64,000 bases of DNA, from positions 248,001 through 312,000 of the IMG/VR virus record IMGVR_UViG_3300031787_007614; one strand, written 5' to 3'. Below are positions 21,672 to 33,871 of this stretch, piece by piece. The position numbers were made by a program, and so were the translations under genes. Below the pieces are notes generated by a model, which was not told the origin of the DNA, did not search any database, and was given only the letters and a program-made list of their open reading frames with translations. The first letter of the stretch is position 1. Each line of letters begins with the position of its first letter.

Positions 21672-22517
21672 ATGAACCAAAATCACAATCCACTTAGACA
21701 ATTTTTTAGACAACCAGCAATTTACTTGCGGTTGCCCAGCCAGGGCAAATACTGGCCCGAAGGCAGCTTAGACGTGCCTCAAAACGGTGAGCTGCCTGTT
21801 TATCCCATGACAGCCATTGACGAAATCACCTATCGCACGCCAGATGCGCTGTTTAGCGGGCAAGCTGTGGTCAATGTAATACACAGTTGTGTGCCGTCAA
21901 TTAAGAATGCCTGGCATGCTCCTGTGGCAGATTTGAATTCTATCCTAGTTGCTATTCGTATTGCCAGCTACGGGCATGAGCTTGAAATTGAAACTACATG
22001 TCCTGCTTGCAAACACATTGAGAGTTTTGCGTTAGACTTGCGCAATGCACTGGATCAGTTGACCATGCCGGACTTTTCTGCCACAGTAACTTATGGTGAT
22101 TTGGAAATTTATTTTCATCCCATGAGTTACGAAAAGCAAAATGAAATCAATCTTGAGCAGTTTGAAAATCAACGCATGATGCGCAACATCAGCATGGATA
22201 CTGAGCTCACCGAAGACGAAAAGTTACAAAAACTAGCAGAAGTGATGAAAATACTAACTCAGCTGACCATGCGAGCTCTCAAGTACTCAATTTCAGCAAT
22301 TCGTACACCAAATGCTGTTGTGTCAGAGACTGAGCACATTGATGAATTTTTGCAAAACTGCGATCGTCAAATTTTTGTTGCTGTTAGAGATCACGCAGTT
22401 GACTTGCGCAATCGTACAGAACTGAAACCTGTGCATCTCACTTGCAGTGAATGCAATCACGAACATGATCAAGCACTAAATCTGGATCTTACAAATTTTT
22501 TCGAAGCCGCCTCCTGA
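21672..22517 (+). CDS. T4 gp26-like baseplate hub / tail assembly chaperone
   Basis: Motifs LPSQGKYW, ELPVYPMTAIDE, ILVAIRIASYG, two CxxC pairs and C-terminal LTNFF; adjacent to the tape-measure gene. Confidence 0.75.
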   Translation: MNQNHNPLRQFFRQPAIYLRLPSQGKYWPEGSLDVPQNGELPVYPMTAIDEITYRTPDALFSGQAVVNVIHSCVPSIKNAWHAPVADLNSILVAIRIASYGHELEIETTCPACKHIESFALDLRNALDQLTMPDFSATVTYGDLEIYFHPMSYEKQNEINLEQFENQRMMRNISMDTELTEDEKLQKLAEVMKILTQLTMRALKYSISAIRTPNAVVSETEHIDEFLQNCDRQIFVAVRDHAVDLRNRTELKPVHLTCSECNHEHDQALNLDLTNFFEAAS

Positions 22518-22732
22518 TCCTCCCAGTAGAGGAAATTGGCGAGTACATTGACAGCCTTGATCAGGAGGCCAACGCAATTAGATCAAACAGTTTAAGATTG
22601 GCTTGGTTAATGCGCGGCGGACTCACCTACGATCAGGTGTTGGCACTAAGTTTCACTGAAAGAAAAATGATCAGCAAGATAGCCGAAGAAAACATGGAAA
22701 CCACCAACAAAACTAAACTGCCGTATTTCTAA
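22499..22732 (+). CDS. -1 frame extension (~77 aa, gp51-like), probably reached by frameshift; not in ORF track
   Basis: The -1 frame is open from 22469 to TAA at 22730-22732 and encodes RSRLLILPVEEIGEYIDSLDQE…WLMRGGLTYDQVLALSFTERKMI…KLPYF. The slippery site A AAT TTT TTC is at 22493-22502. Confidence 0.7.
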   Translation, partial: FRSRLLILPVEEIGEYIDSLDQEANAIRSNSLRLAWLMRGGLTYDQVLALSFTERKMISKIAEENMETTNKTKLPYF

Positions 22733-23232
22733 TGGACTTAGATACAGTTAAACAAGATATTGAAAACTGGATTGTGAACTTTGTAGAAGTTCCACATCCT
22801 GCTCTTGGAGGCTGGGCTCCTTGTCCATACGCACGCTCAGCACGCATGAAAAAAAGCTACGATGTACATGTTGGCGTAGATCCTTACTTTGATCTTAAAA
22901 ATCGAGCACGATGGGGCATGGGCGATAAGGAAGTTATTATCTATGCTTACGATCCTGTGGAATGGCCATATGAATTGTTCAGTGACAGTTTGAAAAATGC
23001 CAACAAGGAACATTTGTTACGCAACGATCTACTTGCACTAGAGGATCATCCCGCAGACGTTGAGATGGTGAACGGTGTGTGTATGAATCAAGGCAAGTAT
23101 GCTCTAGCTCTAGTGCAAAGTCTCAGCGACTTAAACAACAAAGCCAAACTTATGGCTGAGAAGGGATTCTATCACAACTGGCCAGAAGAGTATCTTGCGG
23201 GACTGTTTGAACATCGTAAGGATCCAAGATGA
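22732..23232 (+). CDS. DUF1415-like hypothetical protein
   Basis: W..NFVE…PCPYAR N-terminal motif, DHP, and NQGKYALALVQ. Confidence 0.45.
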   Translation: MDLDTVKQDIENWIVNFVEVPHPALGGWAPCPYARSARMKKSYDVHVGVDPYFDLKNRARWGMGDKEVIIYAYDPVEWPYELFSDSLKNANKEHLLRNDLLALEDHPADVEMVNGVCMNQGKYALALVQSLSDLNNKAKLMAEKGFYHNWPEEYLAGLFEHRKDPR

Positions 23233-23663
23233 GCTATCAGTTTGCCAGAATCGATCTCAGCCAGACCAACTACACACCAAATGTAAAGTGGGAGTATTTG
23301 CGTGAGCCCAACATCAAACAGCTAAACTCTATCTACAGAGACTATTGCAAATACAAACATTTTGCAAGTGTGATGCCTATATTTGACTGTCGTTACACAG
23401 ACCCAATGACAGATGTAATAGGATATTACGATCAAAATCGATTGGTTGCATTCAGTTTGATCCGACGCTATGATGATCATAACGCACTGTGCGATCAATT
23501 TGCATGGAACTACAACAATCCTAAACTACGGTTGGGAATTGAAACAATGAAAACAGAGTGTGCTATCTACAAGGAACGAGGATTCCAATACTTGTATCTT
23601 GAGCAAGCACACCTATACAAATCCAACATGGACGGATTTGAAATACTAGGACCACTGGAGTAA
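23229..23663 (+). CDS. Arginyl/leucyl-tRNA-protein transferase C-terminal-like (ATE_C/Bpt, GNAT fold) protein
   Basis: GYYDQNRLVAFS…FAWNY..PKLRLG…E….KERGFQYLYL resembles the ATE_C pattern; no ATE N-terminal domain is visible. Confidence 0.55.
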   Translation: MSYQFARIDLSQTNYTPNVKWEYLREPNIKQLNSIYRDYCKYKHFASVMPIFDCRYTDPMTDVIGYYDQNRLVAFSLIRRYDDHNALCDQFAWNYNNPKLRLGIETMKTECAIYKERGFQYLYLEQAHLYKSNMDGFEILGPLE

Positions 23664-23665
23664 CT

Positions 23666-24001
23666 ATGGATTTATATACAATTTGGGCAGACAAAGAAGG
23701 CGACATCTCAGACTTAGACTGGGTCAACGGAATGAAAAGTTTCTTTGATCATTTGATATCAGAAGACAAGATGGTAGACTATCGTATCACAAGATGCAAG
23801 ATGGGATTCCGTTCAATTGCGGACATGCCTGAATGGATGATTATCATGGAGTTCCGAGACATGGGTCAAATGGACTCGGCTTTCAAACGAGTAGCACCGC
23901 TTGAGGGTGAACTTGAAGTCAAACACAAGTCATTCAATCAATTTGTGTCAGGCAATATTCAACATGCTTTATTTAGAGACTGGCCAGACACATTTGTATG
24001 A
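23666..24001 (+). CDS. DUF6614-like small alpha/beta protein
   Basis: Pattern MDLYTIW…YRITRCKMG…PEWMIIMEF…QMDSAF…ALFRDWPD. Confidence 0.45.
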   Translation: MDLYTIWADKEGDISDLDWVNGMKSFFDHLISEDKMVDYRITRCKMGFRSIADMPEWMIIMEFRDMGQMDSAFKRVAPLEGELEVKHKSFNQFVSGNIQHALFRDWPDTFV

Positions 24002-24522
24002 ACATCCTCGATCATGTACCTGTAGTACCTGATTGGCCCAAACCAGGTATTAACTTTTTTGACGTAACTGGCATTCTTGCCAATCCAGAAGCATTTGATT
24101 ACTGCTGTGGATGGTTAAAGCATCAAGCACATTGGTATAATGCTTCCAGTCTTGTGGCTGTGGAAAGCCGTGGCTTTGTGTTTGCGGCACCTGTAGCAAG
24201 ACAATTAGGACTTCCACTAATCCTAGTACGTAAACGTGGCAAATTGCCCGGCCCCACAATACAACACAGCTATCAAACTGAATACAGCACTGATACCATT
24301 GAAATGCACCCACACGCTCCAGTAGGCGCACATCCATTGATTGTGGATGACTTGCTAGCCACTGGAGGCACTATAATGGCCACAGCAAATCTAATTCGCA
24401 GTCATTGGATTGACACTAAAATTTCTGCTGCTGTGATTATAAACTTGCAGAACTTGCCTGGAGGGACAGCATTGACTCGGCACAATATTATGTGGGAAGG
24501 AATGGTCAATGTTGATGAATGA
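23998..24522 (+). CDS. apt: Adenine phosphoribosyltransferase
   Basis: Motifs PDWPKPGINFFDV, ESRGF, VRKRGKLPG, Y.TEY and the PRPP-binding loop LIVDDLLATGGT. Confidence 0.93.
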   Translation: MNILDHVPVVPDWPKPGINFFDVTGILANPEAFDYCCGWLKHQAHWYNASSLVAVESRGFVFAAPVARQLGLPLILVRKRGKLPGPTIQHSYQTEYSTDTIEMHPHAPVGAHPLIVDDLLATGGTIMATANLIRSHWIDTKISAAVIINLQNLPGGTALTRHNIMWEGMVNVDE

Positions 24523-25051
24523 TATTATTTTAATAGCTATTCGAGCAGAAGCACCAGATCTCAGCCACATGATGAACTTGTTTTACACTGGTGTGGGCAA
24601 GGTTAACGCTGCCATCACTGCCAGTGAAGTTATCACAAAGTATCGTCCCCGGCGTATCATTAACTTTGGCACAGCTGGTGGTATAACAGTCGCACCAGGA
24701 TTCTATCAATGCACTCAGTTTGTGCAAAGAGACATGACTTGTGAAGCATTAGGGTGTACCCCAGGACAAACACCTTTTGAAACTAGCACACACATTGGCA
24801 ACTCTACTGGCTTAACTTGCAGTACTGGTGACAACTTTGTGATGAATCCCATACTACAAATACCAGCAGATGTTGTAGACATGGAAGCCTATGCCATTGC
24901 CAAAGCATGCGAGAAATATGGAGTTGAGTTTGTGTGTTGGAAATACATCAGCGATCAAGCCAACCAACACGCACACAATGATTGGCAACAACAAGTTGCT
25001 CAAGGACAATCACATTATGTCAACAAACTCAAAGAGTTAAACTTATTATAA
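24509..25051 (+). CDS. mtnN: 5'-methylthioadenosine/S-adenosylhomocysteine nucleosidase (PNP_UDP_1 family)
   Basis: Motifs GVGKVNAA, INFGTAG, STGDNFV, VDMEAYAIA and KYISD; the true start may be 24515. Confidence 0.85.
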   Translation: MLMNDIILIAIRAEAPDLSHMMNLFYTGVGKVNAAITASEVITKYRPRRIINFGTAGGITVAPGFYQCTQFVQRDMTCEALGCTPGQTPFETSTHIGNSTGLTCSTGDNFVMNPILQIPADVVDMEAYAIAKACEKYGVEFVCWKYISDQANQHAHNDWQQQVAQGQSHYVNKLKELNLL

Positions 25052-25509
25052 GACTTGCTACGCAAGTCTATTAACTTCGCTTGCGCTCGTTAATTGATTG
25101 ATTTTCAAGAGCGAAGCGATTAAGTATTCATGTAGATAGATCTAGTCAGACGGAACCGTTTTGCGCGGTTCCGCTGTTGTCTTCATGTGAGTATCACTAG
25201 CCAAGACATTGGAAGTAGGTAATTTATTATACACCGTATGCTAAAGGACTCTGTGCTTTTCCTTCCTACCACGATACACATATTTCTACGTGCTCTAAAC
25301 CTCGTTCCTAGTGTTTAGATTTTTATAGCCGGTGTTCTCGTATGCTAACATTCATACTATATCAATGCGTCGGCCCTATTGTTCTAGCCTCAGACTCACT
25401 TCCAATTTTTCAGGATAGTCAGATTTACTGACGGGAGTGCCTCAATATGTCACGTGTCCGGTTATTCCCCGGTTTTTCCACAGCGGTATTACAAACTGGC
25501 CCGCCAACC
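25051..25509. ncRNA. Candidate large structured non-coding RNA (or structured DNA element); minus strand favoured
   Basis: ~460 nt with no ORF >=60 aa in an otherwise gap-free region. It contains at least 7 local stems and a 9-bp long-range complement (25208-25216 / 25398-25406). Confidence 0.5.
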
Positions 25510-25776
25510 TTAAGTGTTAGGTAAAATATAACCTTTTGGAATCCAATTAACAAATTTTCCACCGCAAGTGTTGCAAACTATTTTGCCTGCATGCGGTCCG
25601 GTAGGTTTGTTGACTATTTCCCATTCATGATTTTCGTGTATGCCTAATTGTTGCCTGAGTTTTTTTCGTTGTTCGTGCCATGCTTTATCAAATCCTGTCT
25701 TTGGATTAGTCCAATACGGATCATTCAAAAAGCCAGTGTCGCTTTTGTTAGTTTTACTGTAGTCAAGTTTAGTCAT
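25510..25776 (-). CDS. Small putative Zn-binding protein (H..H, PH, CxxC)
   Basis: HENH…PHAGKIVCNTCGGKFVNW; its start overlaps the GIY-YIG stop. Confidence 0.6.
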   Translation of the reverse strand: MTKLDYSKTNKSDTGFLNDPYWTNPKTGFDKAWHEQRKKLRQQLGIHENHEWEIVNKPTGPHAGKIVCNTCGGKFVNWIPKGYILPNT

Positions 25777-26201
25777 AATTTTCCTACGATGTGTGAGCCA
25801 TGCACACGAACTTGAATATGGCCGTTATAATAATCTGTTGATTCCAATACTTTTCTTGTGAACTGTTCTCTTGCTTCAATGTACGAACATTCTGATTTTG
25901 ATTTACAATAGTAAAGTATTTCTCTGGTAAAGTTTTCGGTGCCTAAAGTGATTACGTCTGCGGTTAATTCTGGGCTTGACCCGTAGTACTCTCTCCAATC
26001 TGAATCAATCTTTGATCGTATCTTCTTCCGCTTCTTTGTGCCGTTCTTTTGTTTGACTATTTTGTATGTTGTTTTGCTAAATTTTGCTAATTTTTTGCCT
26101 ATGTACTTGCGTCCAGATAGATTATTTGTGATTAGATAAACAAAACCTACACATTCTTCGGGCAGAGTCTCAACTGGGGTGTCTTGATGTAGCCATGTCA
26201 T
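25773..26201 (-). CDS. Stand-alone GIY-YIG nuclease-domain protein
   Basis: GFVYLITNNLSGRKYIGKK, YYGSS, FTREIL, E..EQF and YYN; CATAACTA lies upstream. Confidence 0.85.
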   Translation of the reverse strand: MTWLHQDTPVETLPEECVGFVYLITNNLSGRKYIGKKLAKFSKTTYKIVKQKNGTKKRKKIRSKIDSDWREYYGSSPELTADVITLGTENFTREILYYCKSKSECSYIEAREQFTRKVLESTDYYNGHIQVRVHGSHIVGKL

Positions 26202-26234
26202 GTGCGTTTAGTGGGTTTGCCTTTCGTGTTATAG

Positions 26235-26849
26235 TTATGATTTATGATCAAAGTTTACGTAAAAAGTTGCCTCTTCTATCACTGTGTTTGGACCAACAGA
26301 GATAGCGTATGTTATAAAATTGCTAATATCTTTTAAATTAATGCCGTTTCCTGTCCAGGTGGGCCGTCCACGACTTAGTTCTGTGTCCAAGCGATCAGGT
26401 GTGATTAGCGTGGTTCTGAACTGCACCAGATTTTGTTTGAATGACTGGGTGCCCTGCCTGCTGGCATGTGCCAGTGCCGCCTTGGCCACGCGGTACGTTT
26501 CAAATCTAGGCTCAGCAGCAACAATATGATGCTCGCCCACTGATCCAATATTAAAGATGTGCCCACTTTTGCCAGCGTTTTTCCACTTGTCGTATACTGC
26601 CATGTACAAGTTTGTTTGTGCAAAGTTGGCCCAGGCTTCTTGTGGTGGCCCATCAAATGCATTGTTTACAAACACATCATAATTCAAACTTTGTTGAGCA
26701 ATCAATTTGACTGCTTGGTCATCAGTGATATCCAAGTTTGTGGATCTGCTGACACTGTCAGCACCAAACACATCCACTAGGTGTTGCCCCAGTCCTCGGT
26801 TACCGCCTGTAACTAACATTTTCATCTTTTGCTTCCTCCTTGATCCCAA
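26235..26849 (-). CDS. Short-chain dehydrogenase/reductase (start probably 26825)
   Basis: Motifs TGGNRGLG, FVNNA, NIGS and catalytic YRVAK. Confidence 0.9.
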   Translation of the reverse strand: MGSRRKQKMKMLVTGGNRGLGQHLVDVFGADSVSRSTNLDITDDQAVKLIAQQSLNYDVFVNNAFDGPPQEAWANFAQTNLYMAVYDKWKNAGKSGHIFNIGSVGEHHIVAAEPRFETYRVAKAALAHASRQGTQSFKQNLVQFRTTLITPDRLDTELSRGRPTWTGNGINLKDISNFITYAISVGPNTVIEEATFYVNFDHKS

Positions 26850-27910
26850 ACTTTTGTAAATTTTTCACCGCATGTCATAGCACATTCAAACAATCGATCA
26901 CGAGTAAACGATTCAACTAAATCACTCCACATGGGATTTTCAAAAACACCTTCGAGGCTATTGTTATGAATGTTGAGATTATCTAATCCGTAACACAACA
27001 AAAAGTCTCGTACTTGATTGCGACCACCGGGCTGACTTAATGCATTTGCTCCTGGCATTGATCCATCATAAAATCTTGCATCATACAAATTGTGATTGAA
27101 AAAGTTGCATGGTAATACAACACCTTCGGCGTTGATAGCTACTTTGCGTCCTTGCAAGGCATCACATTTGATAGTAGTAGTAGCAAAGTAGTTCTGTTGC
27201 TTTTTTAACTCAGGTAAAAATGTCATACTGCGATTCTTGTACTGTGCATCACTAGGTGGTTCAAGTACATAGTCACTTTTGGCCACTGGCCACACAGGCA
27301 TCTCTTCCAGGGTGGTGTGATTCAAAAATCTACCAGTGTTTCGAATTAGTATGTTAAAAAATTTCATACTGCTGGCCAGTTGTTTGGCCTGCTCAACTTG
27401 GTGCTCGTTGTGTTTGAATACAATATAGTTCCATTGTGCTCGTCCTCCAGCATTTATAAACGCAGCGGCGTTTTCAATAACTTTGTTGTATTTTACATTT
27501 TTTCTATACAAATGTAAAGTATCTTCTAGTCCGTCAATACCAAAGTCAATTTGTCCGTAGCCGTTCATGATACTAGAAACTTCTGCCCAGTAATCAGGAT
27601 CGTGTACTCCGCCATTGGTATGGAAGTATAACCAAAGTGTAGGAGCTTTCTTTCTAAAGTCACGTAGTATGTCTAAAAAGTCTGGATGCATGATGGGATC
27701 GCCATAACTGCCGCAAAAGAATACTTGACGTAATCTACTGCACAATTCTTCAGAGAATGCACGGTCAATTACTTCACGTGATAAGTGTGTTAACGGCATG
27801 TAAGGATTGATACCATGTCCGTTGAGGTTGCGAGGACACTGGGGACAGGCAGCATTACAATAGCTGGTGATCTCTATCTGATACTCGTCAATAGTTTTAT
27901 AATCAAACAT
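26822..27910 (-). CDS. Radical SAM enzyme with C-terminal SPASM/twitch-like Cys domain
   Basis: CNAACPQC, GDP, HTNG, IDGL, G.VLPC and CAMTC. Confidence 0.9.
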   Translation of the reverse strand: MFDYKTIDEYQIEITSYCNAACPQCPRNLNGHGINPYMPLTHLSREVIDRAFSEELCSRLRQVFFCGSYGDPIMHPDFLDILRDFRKKAPTLWLYFHTNGGVHDPDYWAEVSSIMNGYGQIDFGIDGLEDTLHLYRKNVKYNKVIENAAAFINAGGRAQWNYIVFKHNEHQVEQAKQLASSMKFFNILIRNTGRFLNHTTLEEMPVWPVAKSDYVLEPPSDAQYKNRSMTFLPELKKQQNYFATTTIKCDALQGRKVAINAEGVVLPCNFFNHNLYDARFYDGSMPGANALSQPGGRNQVRDFLLCYGLDNLNIHNNSLEGVFENPMWSDLVESFTRDRLFECAMTCGEKFTKVWDQGGSKR

Positions 27911-28397
27911 TTATTTTAAAAAAGTCCAAAGTGTCTTTGAGTATGTCATTGCCACTGCGATCCAGTGTTTGTTCTGGACTCACGCCTGCAGGATTGATTG
28001 TTTTAATAATCCAATTCAATACTGGCGCATCAAAATTCAAAATCCATGTACCGTTGTTGCCCAACCAATGACATGGCGTAATGCACTCCAAACTGTAATC
28101 TGGGTACCAACGTCCTTGATGCGTTAGCATGCAATGTTCATGATGATCTAAATCTACTCCGTCGACCACAATAGATTTTAATTCAATATGACGATCATGT
28201 TCGGCATTCTGATGTTTCCAGGCATGCTTACCAAAGTGTTCTATAGTCAATGTGTGAGTACCTGGCACTAACTCTGTGTTCACAACAATTTGTTTTTTCA
28301 CTGTGTCTTGATACAAGCATTGTTGATCAATAAAAATTTTGACTGTAGGGATACCAAAATAATCATCGTAATCAAACTCAAACAAAAATTCAGACAT
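27903..28397 (-). CDS. Hypothetical beta-rich protein in the radical-SAM cassette
   Basis: 164-aa ORF overlapping both neighbours. Confidence 0.65.
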   Translation of the reverse strand: MSEFLFEFDYDDYFGIPTVKIFIDQQCLYQDTVKKQIVVNTELVPGTHTLTIEHFGKHAWKHQNAEHDRHIELKSIVVDGVDLDHHEHCMLTHQGRWYPDYSLECITPCHWLGNNGTWILNFDAPVLNWIIKTINPAGVSPEQTLDRSGNDILKDTLDFFKINV

Positions 28398-29871
28398 TGG
28401 CCAACTCCGTAAGATATCGATCTTTGATAATACTCAAGTGATCATCACCTTTCCAGATAGTATATCCCAGATCTTCGGCCAACTTGTGCAGTTCAATGCG
28501 TCGACGCACACGTTCTGCATAGTCAAGTTCAGGTGTTGTGGTACAAATCCAATTGATGCCTTTGGCGGTGTCGCCCTTGATTGGAACAATGTTAAATTTT
28601 GCAGGATTATCAAACATAGGTGTTCCTTGTTCTACTGTCAATCCTGTGCCTAAGTTGCATCCAATAATAGTTCCTAGTGCAACATATTTCTGCCAGCGTC
28701 GTAGCAAGTTCTTGGTCTCTTCAAAGTCGGTTTGTGTTTCATTTGGAAACCCTACCAGCAACAACAAGAAGAATTTCATTTTGTACTTGCTGAACTGCTG
28801 TATGTTAAACTCAAGATCTGCGTTTGAAAATCCCTTGTTCATGATGTTTCGCAAACGTTCGCTACCAGTCTCAACTCCAGTTTCAAACATTTCTCCTCCG
28901 GCACGACTTAGCAGTTCAAAATTGTGCTCTTTGAATTGAGTTTCACTTCGCACAATCCAATAACCACTGAATGTAAAGAATCTGTCAGGTAAATTGTTTT
29001 GTTGATAAAACTCAATGATGCAGTTCAAAAATAGTTTAAAATCTTTGACGCTGCCGTTCATCAACGCATCGTTAAAATAAAAGTTACGCACACCATACTG
29101 TTGGTAATAGCCAATCATTTCATTAGCTAGTACCTTTCCGTTTTTGTATCTATATCCTCCAGCATGTGTGGGGATGTCACAAAACGCACAGCTTCTAACA
29201 CATCCACGACTGCTTTCAATTGGCAATACCCCGCCGGGGTAGGCAGTTACATATTGTTCTATTGCAAAGTCACTATAATCTGCGATGTTGTTAGTATCAA
29301 GATCAACATCATTGACCAACACATCACTGTCTAATCCAGGTACATTGCTACCAGTTAAAAAATTGTAAAAACTGTTTTCAGCTTCTCCAGCAATCCAATG
29401 ATCAATTAGTCCTTGATTTTTTAACTTGTGTGCAAAATGCATCTTGGTACTAAAGCTACCGTTTTGTTCATTGATAAGACCTTGTCCGCCTACAATGATT
29501 GTGCCTGTAAAATTTTTACGCAACAATGGAAAAAAGTCAAGACAAAATCGTTGACTTTCCCAACTGAATACACTTACTGCAATGATCTTGCAATCAAAAG
29601 CCATTAATTTTTCAACCCATGCTTGCAACCAACTAGAGTAAGTTGTTTTCTCCTCAGGCAACAGATTTTTGTTCCATTGTATCCAATATTGATCAATGGC
29701 ATTGGCAGTTGACGGATTAGAAGATTTAAAATTTTGATAAAAGTCCAAATTAATATCAAAAACTTTTGAAGTAACGCCCGCACGATTGCAAATTGATTTG
29801 AGTATGCCACAGGCACTTTGAGGCCGAGTGGCACTCAAACGTGGTATACTTAAAATCAAAACATCAGTCAT
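28390..29871 (-). CDS. B12-binding-domain-like radical SAM protein
   Basis: N-terminal IAVSVFSW…IIVGG, then SSRGCVRSCAFCD, GVETGSER and VGFPNET..DF. Confidence 0.85.
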   Translation of the reverse strand: MTDVLILSIPRLSATRPQSACGILKSICNRAGVTSKVFDINLDFYQNFKSSNPSTANAIDQYWIQWNKNLLPEEKTTYSSWLQAWVEKLMAFDCKIIAVSVFSWESQRFCLDFFPLLRKNFTGTIIVGGQGLINEQNGSFSTKMHFAHKLKNQGLIDHWIAGEAENSFYNFLTGSNVPGLDSDVLVNDVDLDTNNIADYSDFAIEQYVTAYPGGVLPIESSRGCVRSCAFCDIPTHAGGYRYKNGKVLANEMIGYYQQYGVRNFYFNDALMNGSVKDFKLFLNCIIEFYQQNNLPDRFFTFSGYWIVRSETQFKEHNFELLSRAGGEMFETGVETGSERLRNIMNKGFSNADLEFNIQQFSKYKMKFFLLLLVGFPNETQTDFEETKNLLRRWQKYVALGTIIGCNLGTGLTVEQGTPMFDNPAKFNIVPIKGDTAKGINWICTTTPELDYAERVRRRIELHKLAEDLGYTIWKGDDHLSIIKDRYLTELANV

Positions 29872-31949
29872 GCCACTTCTATATCTGTGTTGTAGCTGGT
29901 AAAGCCATTCTCTTTGATCACTTTGAGAATGTTTTCAACTCTGCTAGTAAGTTCATCTCTATGACTAACCAGCCAGATTGACTTGTGGCGTTCGCGACTC
30001 ATCTTCTTCAACAGGCCTAGTGCATTTTCCACACCTTGTGTGTCCAACCCGTTGTCAATCATCTCGTCAATAAACAACAAGTTGATGGGCGAGTACAAAC
30101 TTTCCCAAACATCACGGAATGCCCAGCTCATGCTTAAGATCAATCGATTGCGTTCGCCACGACTCAAGTTGTCAAAATCCAGTTCACGACCCAGTTCTTC
30201 AATGCTCACTGTCAAGTCGTTCATGAACTTCACTGTGTGTGGTAAGCCAATTCTATCCAAGTAGTGTGTGAGACGTTGATTCAAATAGCTCAAGTTCTGT
30301 TCAATAATCTTCTTACGCACAAACGAGTCTTTTGAGGTCAAAAGTTTGAGCAAGAAGTCCTGATGGTCTTGCACTCTAGTAAGTTCGTTTAAGTGATCGT
30401 AACTCACAACCTGTAGGGCCTGTTGTTGCATTTCGGTAATTTGTTCTGTATACGGATCGGTCTCTAGTGCTTTGCCATTGATCTGTGTCAGCAGGGTGTT
30501 CATGCGACTGCGATGATCGATTGCCTGTGTTTCGGTATCATAATGTGTGACAGGTTGTGTGCCAACTTCTACAGGTGTGTGTTCTGCTAACTGTTCAGCA
30601 TAGGGATCTGTTTCTGCACGTTTGGCATCAATCTTGTGTTGAATGTTTTCCAACTCACTAGAATGTCGAATAGCTTCTGTTTCTGTTTGGTAGTGTGTTG
30701 TGGGTTTGGCACCCAACTCGCCCAATGCGGTTAACGCATCTGTATTTTCCATCCACTGAGTATTGATAGACAATGCTTGTAGTGCTGCCTCTTGCAAGGC
30801 CTTTTCTTTTGTTGCCAATACTGTTTCGTGATTGGTATCATGGAAGTCTTGCCCGCAAGCATAGCACTTGTGATTTTTTAATTCTTCAATTTCGGCTTTG
30901 AGTTTGTTGATGACCTTTTGTTCTTTGGCCTCGTCTGCTACACATCGAGCAATGTATTTTTCTAAGTCTGTAATGTCTTTGGCTTTTTGAATGTAAGCAG
31001 CCAAATCTGTGTGTGCTTGAAGTTCTGCCAAGATGTCGATATGACTGAGTTTGTTGTAGGTTGATTCTAGCTCACCAATGTCTTTGTGTTGTTTTTGTTT
31101 CCAAGCAGTTTGTCGACCAACAAGAGCAGTATATGCATCTTGTTGTTGTTTTCTTGCAGACCACACAGCTAGATCTTTGTGAGCCAGCAGTTCTAGTTCA
31201 ATATCAATCTTTGCTAGATCGTCATACTGACCAACTAGATAAGCCACGTCACTGTCGTACTTCTTTTGCCAAAGCACTTGCCTACGCTTTAGACTCTCAA
31301 TCTGTTCTTCGATGCGTTTGTTGGCTTCTTGCACAGCACGAATTCTAAACTCTTCAGACTGGATAGCATCTTTGGTTTGTCGGTTGAGTTCTTTGATGCG
31401 GTCCGCACGTTCACTCAACAAGGTAATACCTAACAACTGCTCAATGATTGTGCGCTGGTCATTGGCCTTCAAACTTAGAAACGGTTCTGTGTAGGTGTTC
31501 AGCGCCAGCACATGTTTGAACATGTCATGGCTCATGCCAATAATACGCTCTATGGCGTCTTGTGTCTCTCTTGAATCTCCCTGTGCCTCATCCTCTGCGG
31601 CCTTGTGTTCGTTGTTTACATAGAACTTGAGTACGTTGGGTTTGCGCCCACGTTCAATTTTGTAGTCTGTGCCGTTGATATGAAAGTCTAAGCTGACCAA
31701 CATGTGTTTGGCATTGGTTTTGTTTACTAGATTGTCTTTGCGGATGTTTGACAGTGCTTGGCCATATAATGCATAACTTAGTGCATTGATGATTGTGGTC
31801 TTACCTGTGCCGTTTCTCGATCCATCGCCACCCAAGTCTAAGTTTTCACCCAGCACCAGTGTAAGATCATTGCGGTCAAAGTCAATGGCCTGTGTGGCTG
31901 CGCCTACACTCATGAAGTTTTTAACAGTGAGATTTCGTATTTGTATCAT
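29868..31949 (-). CDS. gp46: Recombination ATPase, gp46/Rad50/SbcC
   Basis: Walker A RNGTGKT, Zn hook CYAC, signature LSRGE, Walker B LFIDE and SH switch. Confidence 0.95.
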   Translation of the reverse strand: MIQIRNLTVKNFMSVGAATQAIDFDRNDLTLVLGENLDLGGDGSRNGTGKTTIINALSYALYGQALSNIRKDNLVNKTNAKHMLVSLDFHINGTDYKIERGRKPNVLKFYVNNEHKAAEDEAQGDSRETQDAIERIIGMSHDMFKHVLALNTYTEPFLSLKANDQRTIIEQLLGITLLSERADRIKELNRQTKDAIQSEEFRIRAVQEANKRIEEQIESLKRRQVLWQKKYDSDVAYLVGQYDDLAKIDIELELLAHKDLAVWSARKQQQDAYTALVGRQTAWKQKQHKDIGELESTYNKLSHIDILAELQAHTDLAAYIQKAKDITDLEKYIARCVADEAKEQKVINKLKAEIEELKNHKCYACGQDFHDTNHETVLATKEKALQEAALQALSINTQWMENTDALTALGELGAKPTTHYQTETEAIRHSSELENIQHKIDAKRAETDPYAEQLAEHTPVEVGTQPVTHYDTETQAIDHRSRMNTLLTQINGKALETDPYTEQITEMQQQALQVVSYDHLNELTRVQDHQDFLLKLLTSKDSFVRKKIIEQNLSYLNQRLTHYLDRIGLPHTVKFMNDLTVSIEELGRELDFDNLSRGERNRLILSMSWAFRDVWESLYSPINLLFIDEMIDNGLDTQGVENALGLLKKMSRERHKSIWLVSHRDELTSRVENILKVIKENGFTSYNTDIEVA

Positions 31950-32962
31950 AAGTTTTGATAAATCTTTAACAGTAACTTGTTGTCGTAGAATTCTGATTCA
32001 ATGTTAGTGAGTTGGTCTGTGACAATTTGATCCACTGACTCAAATTTAATCTCGCCTGGCGCCATATCTGTGTCTACATCTGAGTTTTTGTTTGGAATAA
32101 GCGACATCTCACGTAGGTCGTAGTCTTTCACAAACGTTTCTTTGATGAAGTTGGCTTCTTCATATGAAATCTCAATGTCTAGTCCAACACGCACATGCAT
32201 TTTGGGCTTAAGAAGAGCCGGAGCGTTGTCAATAAGGTTGGCGAGTCCGTATACTCTATACGTCGGTTGAGCAGGCCAAGCATGAAAAACAGGCGCTGCT
32301 CCCCACTCCAATATAGTAAGTCCTCGTTCGTCGTCACCAGCATCTGCATAATTATGAGGGAACGCATTACCGATGTAGGTAATATTCTTTTTAGTCTGTC
32401 GCTTGTGGAAGTGTCCGGTGAATACATGTTCAAAATTCTCAAAGTCTTCTCTGCGCACTTCGCCATGGTCTGGCATCTCTACCATGGCATTCATCAAGTA
32501 GCCGGGCAGTTCAAAGTGTCCAAACATGTACTTGCCAGTTAGTTTAGGAATACGTTTATGGTCATCGCCGCAAAGCCAAGGAGCAATAACGACGTCACCG
32601 CTACTAAACCAATCGTTACATATTTCCACATTGGGGAGATGACGTGCCCACTCCACGCTCTGAATATCACGCTTGTCGCGATAATAAAGATCGTGATTCC
32701 CAGGTATAAAATACACACGGTCAAAATTAGCATTTAGGTGCTCTAATGATCGAAGGCTATAGTTTAGGGTAACAATATTTAGGCTGGCTCGATTGTTGTG
32801 CCAGTCACCCAGAAACATGGCAGTTTCGCACCCTTCCTCTTTGGCCTTAGCAGTGGCCCATTTTACAAAGGCCAAACAATCTTCATTGTGCAGAGTTGAA
32901 TTGCTTTTGAGTCCAAAATGTATGTCAGTGAAGATTGCGGCTTTGCGGAATAGATTAGTCAT
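31946..32962 (-). CDS. gp47: Recombination nuclease, gp47/Mre11/SbcD
   Basis: Metallophosphoesterase motifs DIHFG, GD, GNHD, GH and GHFH. Confidence 0.95.
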   Translation of the reverse strand: MTNLFRKAAIFTDIHFGLKSNSTLHNEDCLAFVKWATAKAKEEGCETAMFLGDWHNNRASLNIVTLNYSLRSLEHLNANFDRVYFIPGNHDLYYRDKRDIQSVEWARHLPNVEICNDWFSSGDVVIAPWLCGDDHKRIPKLTGKYMFGHFELPGYLMNAMVEMPDHGEVRREDFENFEHVFTGHFHKRQTKKNITYIGNAFPHNYADAGDDERGLTILEWGAAPVFHAWPAQPTYRVYGLANLIDNAPALLKPKMHVRVGLDIEISYEEANFIKETFVKDYDLREMSLIPNKNSDVDTDMAPGEIKFESVDQIVTDQLTNIESEFYDNKLLLKIYQNL

Positions 32963-32968
32963 CCTGCT

Positions 32969-32997
32969 AGTATACTACTGATCCAGACTAGATACAA
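32969..32997 (-). promoter_or_regulatory. sigma70-like promoter for gp47, near-leaderless
   Basis: TTGTAT-17 nt-TATACT, 6 nt before the ATG. Confidence 0.5.
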
Positions 32998-33871
32998 CCG
33001 GTCCGGACATGGCAGCCATGCCAGCTTTGCCGGAGTTCTGTCTAGTCCACGATGGGTTCAAGCCGTTCATCTCCAGGATGTCATCTCTGATATTTTGATT
33101 TTTCTTTTCAATGTTAAGAATCCGTGTAAAGCTATTAGTGATAGCAGCGGTATAGTAAGCAAAGGGGTTTTGCGATTTAGATTCGTCAAATTGTAAACCA
33201 ATTTGACTAAGTTGAAGTAGAGCTTGTCCACGCATTTCCTCGTTGTAGGTGTAGCCACGCCAGTTGGAACGAGTGGCATAGCGTTCACACAGTTTCATAA
33301 ACATCATGGCCAGCTTCTTGGTCATGTTGCCGTGATCCTTTGAAAACTCTCCTGTGGCCAAATCGCCACGCCAATGACTCTTGCCCACCAAAAACGGTAC
33401 CTTTTGCTCGTCAAGTCTGTAGTGAAAAAACGGGGGAAAATTCACACGCACATGTGTGGGGTCTAGCACAGGTTCATCTATTAAATCTGCCAGCGGATCT
33501 TCTGACACATCATCCAAATCAAGTATGTCTTCCAGTTTCTTTTTCTTGGCAGCGGCTTTGGTAACTTTTTTGGGTGCCATGGGTATGTGTTCCCAGCAGG
33601 TGATTCTAAACACAAGATCTGTGTTGGGGATCTTCTTTTGATCAATCACTTCACCAGTTTCACGTTTGATACGATCTGCTCGATTTCTGCGAGCTTCAAC
33701 AATGGTGCGCTGATTGATTTTGTCTAGACTGGGCAAAATTATGTCGTATTGGTGATCAATTGCTGGATCACGATAACAACAGTAGGTGTTTTTGCTCAGG
33801 TGTATTTCTTTTAAAATGTCACGATTGTTAAGGTAGTTTACCTTAGGTGCGGGTTTTGCAATTAGTGTCAT
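32975..33871 (-). CDS. gp55: Late-transcription sigma factor (gp55-like)
   Basis: NYLNNRDILKEI, NWRGYTYNEEM, FDESKSQNPFAYYT and RILNIEKK; located upstream of gp47/gp46 as in T4-like phages. Confidence 0.85.
   Translation of the reverse strand: MTLIAKPAPKVNYLNNRDILKEIHLSKNTYCCYRDPAIDHQYDIILPSLDKINQRTIVEARRNRADRIKRETGEVIDQKKIPNTDLVFRITCWEHIPMAPKKVTKAAAKKKKLEDILDLDDVSEDPLADLIDEPVLDPTHVRVNFPPFFHYRLDEQKVPFLVGKSHWRGDLATGEFSKDHGNMTKKLAMMFMKLCERYATRSNWRGYTYNEEMRGQALLQLSQIGLQFDESKSQNPFAYYTAAITNSFTRILNIEKKNQNIRDDILEMNGLNPSWTRQNSGKAGMAAMSGPVVSSLDQ

What the first reader, a model, noticed from the sequence alone, without database searches (positions are those of the whole stretch)
22732..29871. Convergent cassettes forming a possible self-contained SAM-chemistry pathway: two radical-SAM enzymes + SDR facing MTAN + APRT + aa-tRNA-transferase-like + two DUFs
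Seen: the plus-strand genes at 22732-25051 are tightly coupled. On the minus strand the B12-like rSAM, hypothetical, rSAM-SPASM and SDR genes are overlapped behind gp46 and look more AT-rich by eye. Known: radical SAM enzymes are inhibited by their by-products 5'-deoxyadenosine and SAH; MTAN hydrolyses both to adenine, and APRT returns adenine to AMP. Inference: the phage carries by-product detoxification and salvage to sustain high SAM flux for an unknown modification (of DNA, virion protein or glycan, or a small molecule). Alternatively, APRT could counter ATP-nucleosidase defences of the Cap17/Detocs type.
Basis: partly seen in the sequence, partly recalled or inferred. Interest (0 to 1): 0.7.

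Follow-up and report, generated by a model that had tools for sequence, protein, structure and literature searches.

The report
Mosaic accessory-gene island in jumbo phage
The genes are real, but they are not one self-contained SAM pathway: they are at least five independently assorting gene modules around a homing endonuclease in a freshwater jumbo T4-like phage, including an adenine-salvage pair and a widespread, uncharacterised radical-SAM/reductase pair.

Summary
In detail: gene calls, overlaps and the AT-rich minus cassette (39.8% GC against 44.3% for the genome) all hold.

Across about 190 related viral loci the region splits into modules that come and go independently, between a baseplate gene and gp46/gp47:
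- a small ORF plus a P422-like protein, an ATE_C-like GNAT and DUF6614, the last three always a trio;
- APRT, seen only together with the nucleosidase;
- a short MTAN-like nucleosidase;
- an 88-aa indel ORF plus a segE homing endonuclease;
- a twitch-type radical SAM plus SDR pair, together in 80 of 80 loci and fused in some;
- a B12-like radical SAM plus a CBM-like 164-aa partner, with a predicted complex.

Of 28 non-redundant intervals with the core rSAM-SDR pair, 22 lack the nucleosidase. The nucleosidase also occurs after nrdAB in Kyanoviridae, beside ClpS in a related jumbo lineage, and at this locus with no rSAM.

Nucleosidase plus APRT is best read as a mobile adenine-salvage pair. The rSAM cassette is a separate redox tailoring unit, probably acting on a carbohydrate-like substrate.

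The complete genome (364 kb) has 16 rSAM matches but no MetK or flavodoxin, so it is not self-contained.

The parts
21672..22517 (+). T4-type baseplate protein. This is the left anchor of the variable island (context only).
   Evidence: PF12322 55.3 bits. It is the conserved flank in all related loci.
22532..22732 (+). Conserved small ORF (58-62 aa in relatives), TAATG-coupled to the next gene. Its start codon in this phage is unclear, because the Met of relatives is replaced here. Candidate starts are TTG at 22598 or ATG at 22610.
   Evidence: Sequence read. Alignment with four relatives gives 14 invariant residues.
22732..23232 (+). A166: DUF6875/DUF1415-fold protein (cytochrome P422-like) with an invariant Cys31-Pro32. 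First member of the A-B-C trio.
   Evidence: Pfam DUF6875 is only 17 bits. The AF2 model has pLDDT 90.9. AFDB hits to DUF6875/DUF1415 proteins have TM 0.5-0.79, and there is no PDB match. P422 heme-thiolate chemistry: bioRxiv 10.64898/2025.12.11.692455.
23229..23663 (+). B144: small GNAT-like protein resembling the C-terminal domain of arginyl/leucyl-tRNA protein transferases.
   Evidence: PF04377 17.5 bits, below the cut-off of 25. Atlas feature hits score 0.98-0.99 to viral clusters that carry ATE_C, one with 3698 members. No homologue in GenBank phages.
23666..24001 (+). DUF6614 protein. It is the most conserved member of the trio, at 84-100% identity across the clade.
   Evidence: PF20319 73.8 bits; conservation.
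23998..24522 (+). Adenine phosphoribosyltransferase (APRT). An optional gene, present only together with the nucleosidase.
   Evidence: NF002636 160 bits, cut-off 125. The PRPP motif VDDLLATGGT is present. Distribution.
24509..25051 (+). Short (180 aa) MTAN-like purine nucleosidase of the PRK05634 type.
   Evidence: PF01048 70.7 bits. NF004168 104.5 bits, below its cut-off of 129, and all MTAN equivalogs are below cut-off. Best PDB hits are MTANs with the ME and SD motifs aligned. E14, E126 and D149 are invariant in 16 homologues.
25052..25509 (.). Convergent intergenic spacer with several hairpins, including a terminator-like stem-loop at 25151-25173.
   Evidence: No Rfam match.
25510..25776 (-). 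h88: 88-aa ORF with a C-terminal CxxC. It is an insertion/deletion polymorphism next to segE.
   Evidence: Absent from relatives at 94% identity. An RNA-library contig joins 25520 to 25789. GC is 37.1%.
25773..26201 (-). segE-type GIY-YIG homing endonuclease. It is the constant hinge between the two cassettes.
   Evidence: PF19835 112.9 bits. Present in nearly all related loci. A 45%-identical copy follows APRT-nucleosidase in Kyanoviridae phage C48C1.
26235..26825 (-). Short-chain dehydrogenase/reductase (196 aa from the ATG at 26825; the ORF runs up to 26849). Obligate partner of the twitch rSAM.
   Evidence: PF00106 28.6 bits, cut-off 26.6. TGGxxGLG, NNAF, Ser95 and Tyr111-x3-Lys115 are invariant. 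Always adjacent to the rSAM. Fused to it in L037, L040, P0121 and P0250.
26822..27910 (-). Radical SAM enzyme with one twitch-like auxiliary-cluster motif. This is the core gene behind gp46 in the clade.
   Evidence: PF04055 44.6 bits. C18/C22/C25 plus C249/C268/C343/C347 are conserved. There are 1954 protein clusters at E<=1e-5, the top ones at 70-94% identity, 460 viral stretches and 807 representatives at E<=1e-30.
27903..28397 (-). h164: beta-sandwich protein with a CBM36/CBM60-like fold plus C-terminal helices. Predicted partner of the B12-like rSAM.
   Evidence: No Pfam hit. Only 6 protein clusters. AF2 pLDDT 84. 2xhh/2xfd E 4e-5 to 2e-4, TM by target 0.70-0.73. AFDB hits are xylan-binding CBM, GH16 and xylanase modules. 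The complex model passes its controls.
28390..29871 (-). B12-like (class-B architecture) radical SAM enzyme. It is an optional insertion, always seen with h164, and is translationally coupled to gp46.
   Evidence: PF04055 46 bits at residues 218-390. NCBIfam PhpK, RiPP C-methyltransferase and B12-rSAM models are all far below cut-off. The profile weakly hits CysS in the N-terminal region (24.9 bits), AprD4 (21.3), OxsB (20.8) and TokK (19.6). C224/C228/C231 are invariant.
29868..32962 (-). gp46 (Rad50-like) and gp47 (Mre11-like) recombination nuclease genes. These form the right anchor (context only).
   Evidence: SMC_N/AAA_23 and Metallophos hits. Conserved flank in all related loci.

Best explanation
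The window comes from a widespread freshwater jumbo T4-like phage. A 364,404-bp record with terminal repeats is identical to the window across this locus. The interval between a baseplate gene and gp46/gp47 is an accessory-gene hotspot hinged on a segE homing endonuclease, and it holds separate modules rather than one pathway.

(1) Shown: a P422-fold protein, an ATE_C-like GNAT and DUF6614 always occur as a trio. Their function is unknown.

(2) Shown: the pairing of a short MTAN-like nucleosidase with APRT. Inferred: the chemistry. The nucleosidase releases adenine from adenosyl compounds (5'-deoxyadenosine, MTA, SAH, possibly adenosine), and APRT converts adenine plus PRPP to AMP. This makes a mobile purine-salvage pair that has landed at several genomic sites, usually next to a segE gene. 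It would clear radical-SAM by-products as a side benefit, but it is not tied to this cassette.

(3) Shown: a twitch-type radical SAM enzyme and an SDR are an obligate two-enzyme unit, translationally coupled to gp46 and fused into one polypeptide in some relatives. Inferred: the radical enzyme abstracts hydrogen from a hydroxylated carbon of a carbohydrate-like substrate. The SDR then reduces the resulting carbonyl or enol with NAD(P)H, giving net deoxygenation or epimerisation, as with AprD4/AprD3.

(4) Shown: a B12-like radical SAM enzyme and a 164-aa protein are co-inherited, and a complex is predicted. Inferred: the carbohydrate-binding-module-like partner presents a glycan or sugar substrate for a further carbon modification such as methylation.
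For: Independence of the modules:
- 36 non-redundant gp46-to-baseplate intervals were compared. 14 have the nucleosidase, and all 8 with APRT are among them. 28 have the core rSAM+SDR pair. 6 have both the nucleosidase and the core pair, 8 have the nucleosidase only, and 22 have the core pair only (gene orders).
- The nucleosidase occurs in other contexts: nrdA-nrdB-APRT-nucleosidase-segE in C48C1 and five IMG/VR loci, and between p267 and ClpS in a related jumbo lineage. This phage has the same block without the nucleosidase.
- About 15 of 18 non-syntenic loci have no rSAM within 10 kb.

Salvage pair:
- APRT passes its equivalog cut-off.
- The nucleosidase's catalytic residues are invariant.

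rSAM-SDR unit:
- The two genes are adjacent in 80 of 80 loci.
- Natural fusions exist: L037, L040, P0121, P0250.
- SDR catalytic motifs are invariant.

Hints that the substrate is a carbohydrate:
- h164 has a CBM36/60-like fold.
- The B12-rSAM:h164 complex scores 0.66 against a best control of 0.00. That mark was reached by 58 of 80 solved complexes and 2 of 110 mismatched pairs. The runs agree in at least 69% of contacts, and partner pLDDT is at least 77. My own alignments were used, so these counts hold only roughly.
- One family member is fused to a WecG/TagA glycosyltransferase and sits next to a GT4 gene.
- The profile hits the nucleoside-sugar enzyme BlsE and the cyclitol enzyme BtrN.
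- AprD4/AprD3 and GenK/GenD1 are precedents (PMC5461906).

Mobility:
- B12-rSAM, h164, segE and h88 are at 37-39% GC against 44.3% for the genome.
- h88 is an indel.
Against: - No substrate is identified for any enzyme, and all specificity claims are inference.
- The nucleosidase is below every NCBIfam cut-off and about 50 aa shorter than MTANs, so activity on 5'-dA, MTA or SAH is unproven.
- Carbohydrate evidence is at fold level (13-19% identity) and rests on a single fusion at 37% identity.
- The rSAM profile does not hit AprD4 and has only weak PDB matches, the best being NifB at 31 bits.
- The complete genome has almost no recognisable glycosyltransferases: one sub-threshold GT2 and no GT1-family (PF00534) match. 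It has no ThyA/dCMP-hydroxymethylase family gene. A phage-made glycan or glucosyl-hmC-type DNA is therefore not evident.
- Loci were ascertained with the nucleosidase and the two rSAMs as queries, keeping the best 80 each time, and most contigs are fragments. The co-occurrence counts are therefore biased and are not genome-wide.
- This phage carries 16 rSAM matches, so a real selective link between by-product removal and rSAM load cannot be excluded.
Confidence: 0.6

Rival explanations
1. The nucleosidase and APRT are retained specifically to remove 5'-deoxyadenosine and SAH made by the phage's many radical SAM enzymes. That keeps those enzymes uninhibited and recycles adenine.
For: - The complete genome has 16 PF04055 matches and the window's own record has 11. 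That is an unusually heavy rSAM load.
- Class-B-type enzymes would yield both SAH and 5'-dA (established biochemistry).
- The MTAN catalytic residues are kept.
- The gene lies 1.8 kb from two rSAM genes in this phage.
Against: - rSAM-rich relatives lack the gene at the syntenic site. Five records with 4-7 rSAM matches each have none in the 67-135 kb held.
- C48C1 has APRT plus the nucleosidase with a single rSAM, placed beside ribonucleotide reductase genes.
- In a related jumbo lineage the gene sits by ClpS with no rSAM nearby.
- No MetK or flavodoxin accompanies it.
Confidence: 0.25
2. APRT, with the nucleosidase, is a counter-defence. It rebuilds AMP from the adenine released by host ATP-nucleosidase effectors of the Cap17/Detocs type.
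For: - The PNP_UDP_1 superfamily includes such effectors, and there is a PADLOC 'PN-superfamily effector' hit of 23.4 bits over residues 120-161.
- The genes are sporadic and mobile, as counter-defence genes often are.
Against: - APRT is never seen without the phage's own adenine-producing nucleosidase. This points to an internal two-step pathway.
- The PADLOC hit covers only the shared catalytic motif.
- APRT would need PRPP and would yield AMP, not ATP.
- No known anti-defence family was matched.
Confidence: 0.05
3. The radical SAM cassette modifies a peptide or protein. This would be RiPP-like or virion-protein maturation (C-methylation, thioether or epimerisation chemistry), not carbohydrate tailoring.
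For: - SPASM/twitch and B12-rSAM families are typical RiPP maturases.
- NCBIfam's second-best hit for the B12-like enzyme is the RiPP C-methyltransferase family (75.5 bits). The twitch rSAM hits maturase families. SkfB appears in the PDB profile hits.
- The phage has few recognisable glycosyltransferases.
Against: - No conserved precursor-like small ORF accompanies the rSAM-SDR pair, which is flanked directly by gp46 and segE in most loci. h88 is an indel.
- No RRE-like domain was found.
- The partner protein has a carbohydrate-binding-module fold.
- There is a glycosyltransferase fusion in the family.
- All NCBIfam scores are far below cut-off.
Confidence: 0.18
4. The rSAM-SDR pair acts on a nucleotide or on DNA. 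This could be a dehydration-reduction of a ribonucleotide, or a base or sugar modification made during replication and recombination.
For: - Translational coupling to gp46/gp47 is conserved across the clade.
- The profile hits nucleotide-using rSAMs: MoaA 26.8 bits, BlsE 29.7 bits, and viperins weakly.
- Homologues sit near thyX in another phage contig.
Against: - No ThyA/hydroxymethylase family gene is present.
- The partner of the neighbouring rSAM is CBM-like.
- All hits are weak and limited to the common rSAM core.
- A class I/II-like nrdA is present, so there is no obvious need for an alternative deoxynucleotide route.
Confidence: 0.18

Closest known systems
Bacterial MTA/SAH nucleosidase (Pfs/MtnN) with adenine phosphoribosyltransferase (Apt)
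   Same: PNP_UDP_1 fold. Equivalents of Glu12, Glu174 and Asp197 are invariant. The APRT is a bona fide equivalog hit. The two genes are adjacent and overlapping, which fits adenine release followed by AMP formation.
   Different: The nucleosidase is 180 aa instead of about 230. It lacks a beta-hairpin and part of the 5'-alkylthio pocket region, and it fails all MTAN equivalog cut-offs. It is phage-borne, mobile and associated with a homing endonuclease.
NCBIfam NF004168 (PRK05634) short 'nucleosidase' of actinobacteria
   Same: This is the best-scoring model (104.5 bits). It has the same length (about 185 aa) and aligns end to end (5-175 against 6-182).
   Different: The score is below the curated cut-off of 129. 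To my knowledge that family itself has no assigned substrate.
AprD4/AprD3 of apramycin biosynthesis (radical SAM diol dehydratase plus NADPH-dependent reductase; PMC5461906)
   Same: A radical SAM enzyme obligatorily paired with an NAD(P)H-type reductase. It is a plausible model for a two-step deoxygenation of a sugar.
   Different: There is no detectable sequence relation between the twitch rSAM profile and AprD4 (6fd2). The substrate is unknown. Here the pair is sometimes fused, and it lies in a phage replication/recombination operon.
Class B cobalamin-dependent radical SAM enzymes (GenK, GenD1, CysS, TokK, OxsB)
   Same: An N-terminal domain of about 200 aa precedes the CxxxCxxC core. There are weak profile hits to CysS, OxsB and TokK, and NCBIfam B12-rSAM families are the top hits.
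   Different: No PF02310 hit, and all scores are far below cut-off. Cobalamin binding is untested. The enzyme has a dedicated CBM-like partner protein, which to my knowledge has not been described for this class.
Twitch/SPASM radical SAM enzymes that act on sugars or nucleoside sugars (BtrN, BlsE)
   Same: A CxxxCxxC core plus four conserved C-terminal cysteines, including a Cx14Gx4C-type motif.
   Different: Only 18-30 bits to these structures. This is a distinct, very large, mostly viral family, and PF13186 is not detected.
T4 segE and hyperplastic regions of T4-like genomes
   Same: A GIY-YIG segE-family gene sits at the junction of variable cassettes between conserved core genes. The neighbouring cargo is AT-rich.
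   Different: The cargo here is metabolic enzymes, and the same endonuclease family accompanies APRT-nucleosidase in another phage family. Homing activity has not been tested.
Cytochrome P422 (former DUF6875) heme-thiolate enzymes (bioRxiv 10.64898/2025.12.11.692455)
   Same: The predicted fold matches DUF6875/DUF1415 models. There is an invariant Cys-Pro as in the RxGxVCP heme-binding motif.
   Different: The rest of the motif and the tryptophan-binding motifs are not recognisable. The protein is only 166 aa. The Pfam score is 17 bits. Heme binding is untested.

Membership tests
MTA/SAH nucleosidase (MtnN/Pfs) | PNP_UDP_1 phosphorylase/nucleosidase fold | tested here: met
   PF01048 70.7 bits, cut-off 25.1. 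The best PDB sequence hits are MTANs.
MTA/SAH nucleosidase (MtnN/Pfs) | Catalytic Glu12, Glu174 and Asp197 (E. coli numbering) | tested here: met
   DMEA and SD align to VEMEA and SD of solved MTANs. E14, E126 and D149 are invariant in 16 family members. The assignment of the N-terminal Glu rests on my own reading of the AIRAE segment.
MTA/SAH nucleosidase (MtnN/Pfs) | Scores above the curated equivalog cut-offs (TIGR01704, NF004079) | tested here: not met
   TIGR01704 55 bits against 73.8. NF004079 77.5 against 169. The best model, NF004168, scores 104.5 against 129.
MTA/SAH nucleosidase (MtnN/Pfs) | Hydrolysis of MTA, SAH and 5'-deoxyadenosine | not testable with these tools
   Needs an enzyme assay.
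Adenine phosphoribosyltransferase | Equivalog score and PRPP-binding motif | tested here: met
   NF002636 160 bits, cut-off 125. VDDLLATGGT is present.
Class B (cobalamin-dependent) radical SAM | CxxxCxxC radical SAM core | tested here: met
   PF04055 46 bits. C224/C228/C231 are invariant.
Class B (cobalamin-dependent) radical SAM | N-terminal cobalamin-binding Rossmann-like domain | tested here: inconclusive
   No PF02310 hit. The profile hits the CysS N-terminal region at 24.9 bits and OxsB at 20.8 bits. There are no conserved N-terminal cysteines, so it is not a methylthiotransferase.
SPASM-domain radical SAM | Seven-cysteine SPASM motif binding two auxiliary clusters (PF13186) | tested here: not met
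   No PF13186 hit. Only four conserved C-terminal cysteines, C249, C268, C343 and C347, which fits a single twitch-like cluster.
Classical SDR | TGxxxGxG, NNAG and Ser-Tyr-Lys catalytic residues | tested here: met
   PF00106 28.6 bits, cut-off 26.6. T6-G7-G8, G11, G13, N54/A56, S95, Y111 and K115 are invariant in 18 sequences.
AprD4/AprD3-type deoxygenation pair | Radical SAM enzyme functionally coupled to an NAD(P)H reductase | tested here: met
   Adjacent in 80 of 80 loci and fused in four independent sequences. This is genetic coupling only.
AprD4/AprD3-type deoxygenation pair | Homology of the radical SAM partner to AprD4 | tested here: not met
   The twitch rSAM profile does not hit 6fd2 at E<=0.1.
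RiPP maturation cassette | Adjacent precursor peptide gene and/or RRE domain | tested here: not met
   No conserved small ORF lies within the rSAM-SDR unit across loci. No RRE-type Pfam hit.
CBM36/CBM60 carbohydrate-binding modules | Beta-sandwich fold | tested here: met
   2xhh and 2xfd with TM by target 0.70-0.73 and probability 1.00. AFDB CBM hits.
CBM36/CBM60 carbohydrate-binding modules | Calcium-dependent sugar binding | not testable with these tools
   Identity is only 13-19% and the ligand residues were not mapped.
Cytochrome P422 (DUF6875) | RxGxVCP heme-binding motif and Pfam membership | tested here: inconclusive
   PF21780 17 bits against a cut-off of 24.5. The fold matches. Only the Cys-Pro of the motif is kept.
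Arginyl/leucyl-tRNA protein transferase (ATE_C) | Pfam PF04377 above the gathering score | tested here: not met
   17.5 bits against 25. Atlas feature similarity points the same way but is not an alignment.

The most novel reading that the evidence does not exclude
The twitch radical SAM-SDR pair sits at a fixed position behind gp46 and is sometimes one polypeptide. It could be the founding unit of a virus-encoded radical biosynthetic system.

Together with the B12-like rSAM:CBM-like heterodimer, it would carry out a previously undescribed deoxygenation, epimerisation or C-methylation of a sugar or nucleotide-sugar during infection. The other roughly 14 rSAM matches of this phage would take part too. 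Those include genes with N-terminal SPASM domains, interleaved with a 10-copy virus-only paralogue family.

The result would be to remodel a host or virion glycan, or to make a small molecule.
Probability: 0.15. Interest if true: 0.8.

Novelty: new variant of a known kind. Interest (0 to 1): 0.5.

Why it matters
The proposed phage-encoded 'SAM by-product detoxification for a private radical pathway' does not hold as a locus-level unit. That warns against reading function from the adjacency of cassettes in phage hotspots.

What remains is still useful.
- **A salvage pair.** A mobile adenine-salvage pair, associated with a homing endonuclease, is spread over at least two phage families.
- **A large uncharacterised enzyme pair.** The radical-SAM/SDR pair comprises about 2000 protein clusters and 460 viral contigs, in abundant freshwater jumbo phages that carry up to 16 radical SAM matches. 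The natural fusion proteins and the predicted rSAM:CBM-like complex give direct handles for biochemistry.

If the substrate is a glycan or nucleotide-sugar, this would be a new kind of viral metabolic reprogramming.

Tried and rejected
- **GenBank phage DNA.** Megablast and blastn of the 7.5-kb region found nothing. tblastn of B144 found nothing. The twitch rSAM gave only 23-28% hits to Campylobacter and Pelagibacter phages.
- **PADLOC.** No defence or counter-defence family beyond motif-level hits.
- **RNA features.** No Rfam match over 22000-30500 and no tRNA in the window.
- **T4 late-promoter motif TATAAATA.** Two matches in the window, at chance level, and none near the cassettes.
- **Single-sequence PDB search of the twitch rSAM.** Only spurious Hsp70 hits. 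The profile search gave only weak core matches.
- **A166 fold against the PDB.** No match.
- **RNA-library contigs from four studies.** They cover APRT, the nucleosidase, the spacer and segE, mostly at 90-99% identity and so from relatives, and barely touch the rSAM cassette. They are assembler contigs and do not show transcription, so I drew no conclusion about expression.
- **rSAM count in the 347-kb NCBI record behind L146.** Not possible, because the record is not held.
- **Literature.** Searches for phage MTAN/APRT with radical SAM found no relevant paper. The 'moraphage' jumbo lineage paper concerns another group.
- **Cyanophage origin.** Considered and set aside. The complete genome has no psbA, although the nearest isolate carrying the nucleosidase is a Kyanoviridae member.
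- **DUF6614 as an anti-Druantia gene.** This comes from a single mention in a preprint and was noted only as a lead.

Full report
**1. What is in the sequence**

The window is the minus strand of bases 47194-111193 of a 220,546-bp IMG/VR virus record. Across this locus it is identical to a 364,404-bp record with direct terminal repeats, rated 100% complete.

The phage is T4-like. A T4 baseplate family gene lies at 21672-22517, and gp46/gp47 homologues lie at 29868-32962. No DNA similarity to any GenBank phage was found. The same genotype occurs almost letter for letter in freshwater and lake metagenomes of at least nine studies.

The minus cassette is 39.8% GC against 44.3% for the genome, and only 0.2% of equally long genome windows are as low.

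- a segE-type GIY-YIG homing endonuclease (25773-26201);
- an 88-aa ORF (25510-25776);
- a 458-bp hairpin-rich spacer;
- a conserved small ORF coupled to the first plus-strand gene.

The SDR most likely starts at the ATG at 26825, which overlaps the rSAM stop.

**2. Comparative anatomy**

Three viral-contig scans used the nucleosidase, the B12-like rSAM and an alignment of the twitch rSAM as queries. A fourth used a nucleosidase alignment. Together they gave about 190 loci.

The backbone is h298-gp47-gp46-[variable]-twitch rSAM-SDR-segE-[variable]-baseplate gene.
- The twitch rSAM and the SDR are adjacent in 80 of 80 loci. They are fused into one ORF of 570-586 aa in L037, L040, P0121 and P0250.
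- The B12-like rSAM and h164 occur as a pair in about half of the loci, inserted between gp46 and the twitch rSAM. They diverge fast, at 36-51% and 25-42% identity. In other loci a different 283-aa rSAM occupies the site.
- A166, B144 and DUF6614 are always a trio, present in most loci and absent from some.
- The nucleosidase is in a minority of loci, and APRT is in fewer still and only together with it.

In 36 non-redundant intervals:
- 14 have the nucleosidase;
- 8 have APRT, all of them with the nucleosidase;
- 28 have the core rSAM-SDR pair;
- 6 have both the nucleosidase and the core pair, 8 have the nucleosidase only, and 22 have the core pair only;
- one interval has APRT plus the nucleosidase and no rSAM.

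The sample is biased by how it was collected, and most contigs are fragments.

**3. The nucleosidase travels**

In Kyanoviridae phage C48C1 and five IMG/VR loci the order is nrdA-nrdB-APRT-nucleosidase-segE. There, APRT is 40% identical to the window's copy, the nucleosidase 57% and segE 45%. C48C1 has a single rSAM match in 156 kb.

In another jumbo lineage the nucleosidase (62-67% identity) lies between a 267-aa gene and ClpS, with no rSAM or APRT within 7 kb. This phage has the same ClpX-Hsp20-ClpS-p267-UGDH block (52-83% identity) without the nucleosidase. The gene has therefore changed position within related phages.

Most other non-syntenic loci have no rSAM within 10 kb, about 15 of 18, judged with HMMs built from this phage's four rSAM families.

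rSAM matches per record:

| Record | Size (kb) | rSAM matches | Nucleosidase |
|---|---|---|---|
| G001 | 364 | 16 | present |
| G002 | 286 | 13 | present |
| G003 | 109 | 5 | present |
| G004 | 123 | 8 | present |
| G005 | 135 | 7 | none found in the held part |
| G006 | 85 | 4 | none found in the held part |
| G007 | 92 | 4 | none found in the held part |
| G008 | 77 | 7 | none found in the held part |
| G009 | 67 | 6 | none found in the held part |

The complete genome has no MetK and no flavodoxin, so SAM supply and reduction depend on the host.

**4. The salvage pair**

APRT passes an equivalog cut-off and has the PRPP motif.

The nucleosidase belongs to a family of 4698 proteins at E<=1e-5, the listed ones being 177-187 aa. 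It matches solved MTANs best and keeps E14, E126 and D149 invariant. However, it is about 50 aa shorter than MTANs and scores below every curated cut-off. Its best model is the uncharacterised short 'nucleosidase' NF004168.

The repeated APRT-then-nucleosidase arrangement, across three divergent APRT lineages, argues for a two-step route from adenosyl compound to adenine to AMP. Which adenosyl compound is used is not known.

**5. The radical SAM cassette**

The twitch rSAM family is very large. It has 1954 clusters at E<=1e-5, with the top ones at 70-94% identity, and 807 representatives at E<=1e-30. It keeps the CxxxCxxC motif plus four C-terminal cysteines. It has only weak relatives among solved structures: NifB, BlsE, MoaA and BtrN.

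Family members are fused to an SDR, a flavodoxin, a WecG/TagA glycosyltransferase (next to a GT4 gene), an AMP-binding enzyme and N-terminal-SPASM rSAMs.

The SDR keeps all catalytic motifs.

h164 was modelled at pLDDT 84. It has a CBM36/60-like beta-sandwich followed by helices.

The complex model of the B12-like rSAM with h164 scores 0.66 against a best control of 0.00.
- That mark was reached by 58 of 80 solved complexes and 2 of 110 mismatched pairs.
- The runs agree in at least 69% of contacts, and partner pLDDT is at least 77.
- My own alignments were used, so these counts hold only roughly.
- The interface joins rSAM residues 394-400 and 452-486 to h164 residues 79-86 and 127-160.

The model supports binding but does not show it.

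The B12-like label rests on architecture and on weak profile hits to CysS, OxsB and TokK. Cobalamin binding is untested.

I infer a sugar-type substrate, by analogy with AprD4/AprD3 and with GenK/GenD1 (PMC5461906). The evidence is thin. The phage has almost no recognisable glycosyltransferases and no ThyA-family gene.

**6. The trio**

A166 was modelled at pLDDT 90.9. It matches no solved structure, but it does match AlphaFold models of DUF6875/DUF1415 proteins. DUF6875 was recently described as the heme-thiolate cytochrome P422 family. A166 keeps only an invariant Cys-Pro of that family's heme-binding motif.

B144 is a sub-threshold ATE_C-like GNAT belonging to a large viral family. DUF6614 is a solid Pfam hit.

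Nothing links the trio to SAM chemistry.

**7. Verdict**

The adenine-salvage logic stands. The self-contained pathway does not, because the cassettes face each other only because both lie in a hotspot hinged on segE.

The novelty lies in the uncharacterised rSAM-SDR unit, the rSAM:CBM-like pair and the exceptional rSAM load of this phage lineage.

Noticed in passing
Outside the window: own record G000:C1:30329-44384 (minus strand), held as L060:329-14384: A cluster of five radical SAM genes whose SPASM/twitch domain is N-terminal (PF13186 at residues about 8-83, before the rSAM core). They are interleaved with members of a 10-copy, virus-only paralogue family (330-460 aa, no Pfam hit). The cluster also holds an AMP-binding enzyme, a GDSL/DUF6071 hydrolase and a TctC-like protein. 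The nearest named Atlas cluster for the paralogue family is Glyco_transf_10 at 0.80, which is chance level. Elsewhere, twitch-rSAM family members are fused to exactly these partner types.
   Followed up: partly
Whole genome (G001 = IMGVR_UViG_3300031787_007614, 364,404 bp): The complete genome has 16 PF04055 matches, and the window's own 220-kb record has 11. Two lie in the window and the others sit in at least four further loci. This is an unusually high radical SAM load for a phage.
   Followed up: partly
window 22532-22732 (+): A conserved small ORF (58-62 aa in relatives) ends in a TAATG overlap with the first cassette gene. In this phage the Met start of relatives is replaced by Leu-Asp-Gln, so the start codon is unclear.
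   Followed up: partly
window 25510-25776 (-): The 88-aa ORF next to segE is an insertion/deletion polymorphism. It is missing in relatives at 94% identity, and one RNA-library contig joins 25520 to 25789 with 22 other letters in between.
   Followed up: partly
L058:9455-9949 (phage C48C1, OQ984149.1): The ORF annotated 'NAD synthetase' directly after the nucleosidase is a segE-like GIY-YIG protein, 45% identical to the window's segE. APRT-nucleosidase-segE therefore recurs as a block in a different phage family.
   Followed up: yes
L037:10158-11870 and L040:10438-12150 (minus strand): In these relatives the twitch rSAM and the SDR form one 570-aa ORF. P0121 (573 aa) and P0250 (586 aa) are further independent fusions.
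   Followed up: yes
window 25052-25509: A 458-bp convergent spacer with several perfect hairpins, one directly after the nucleosidase stop and one terminator-like at 25151-25173. There is no Rfam match.
   Followed up: partly
window 32975-33871 (-) and loci between gp46, gp47 and h298: In relatives, further variable genes are inserted between gp46 and gp47 and between gp47 and the 298-aa gene. These include extra B12-like and N-SPASM rSAMs and a GDSL-like gene. The hotspot therefore extends beyond the finding's coordinates.
   Followed up: no
window 23666-24001 (+): A preprint reports that a phage ORF annotated as DUF6614 had anti-Druantia type I activity (bioRxiv 10.1101/2024.04.14.589459). 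Whether it is related to this gene was not tested.
   Followed up: no
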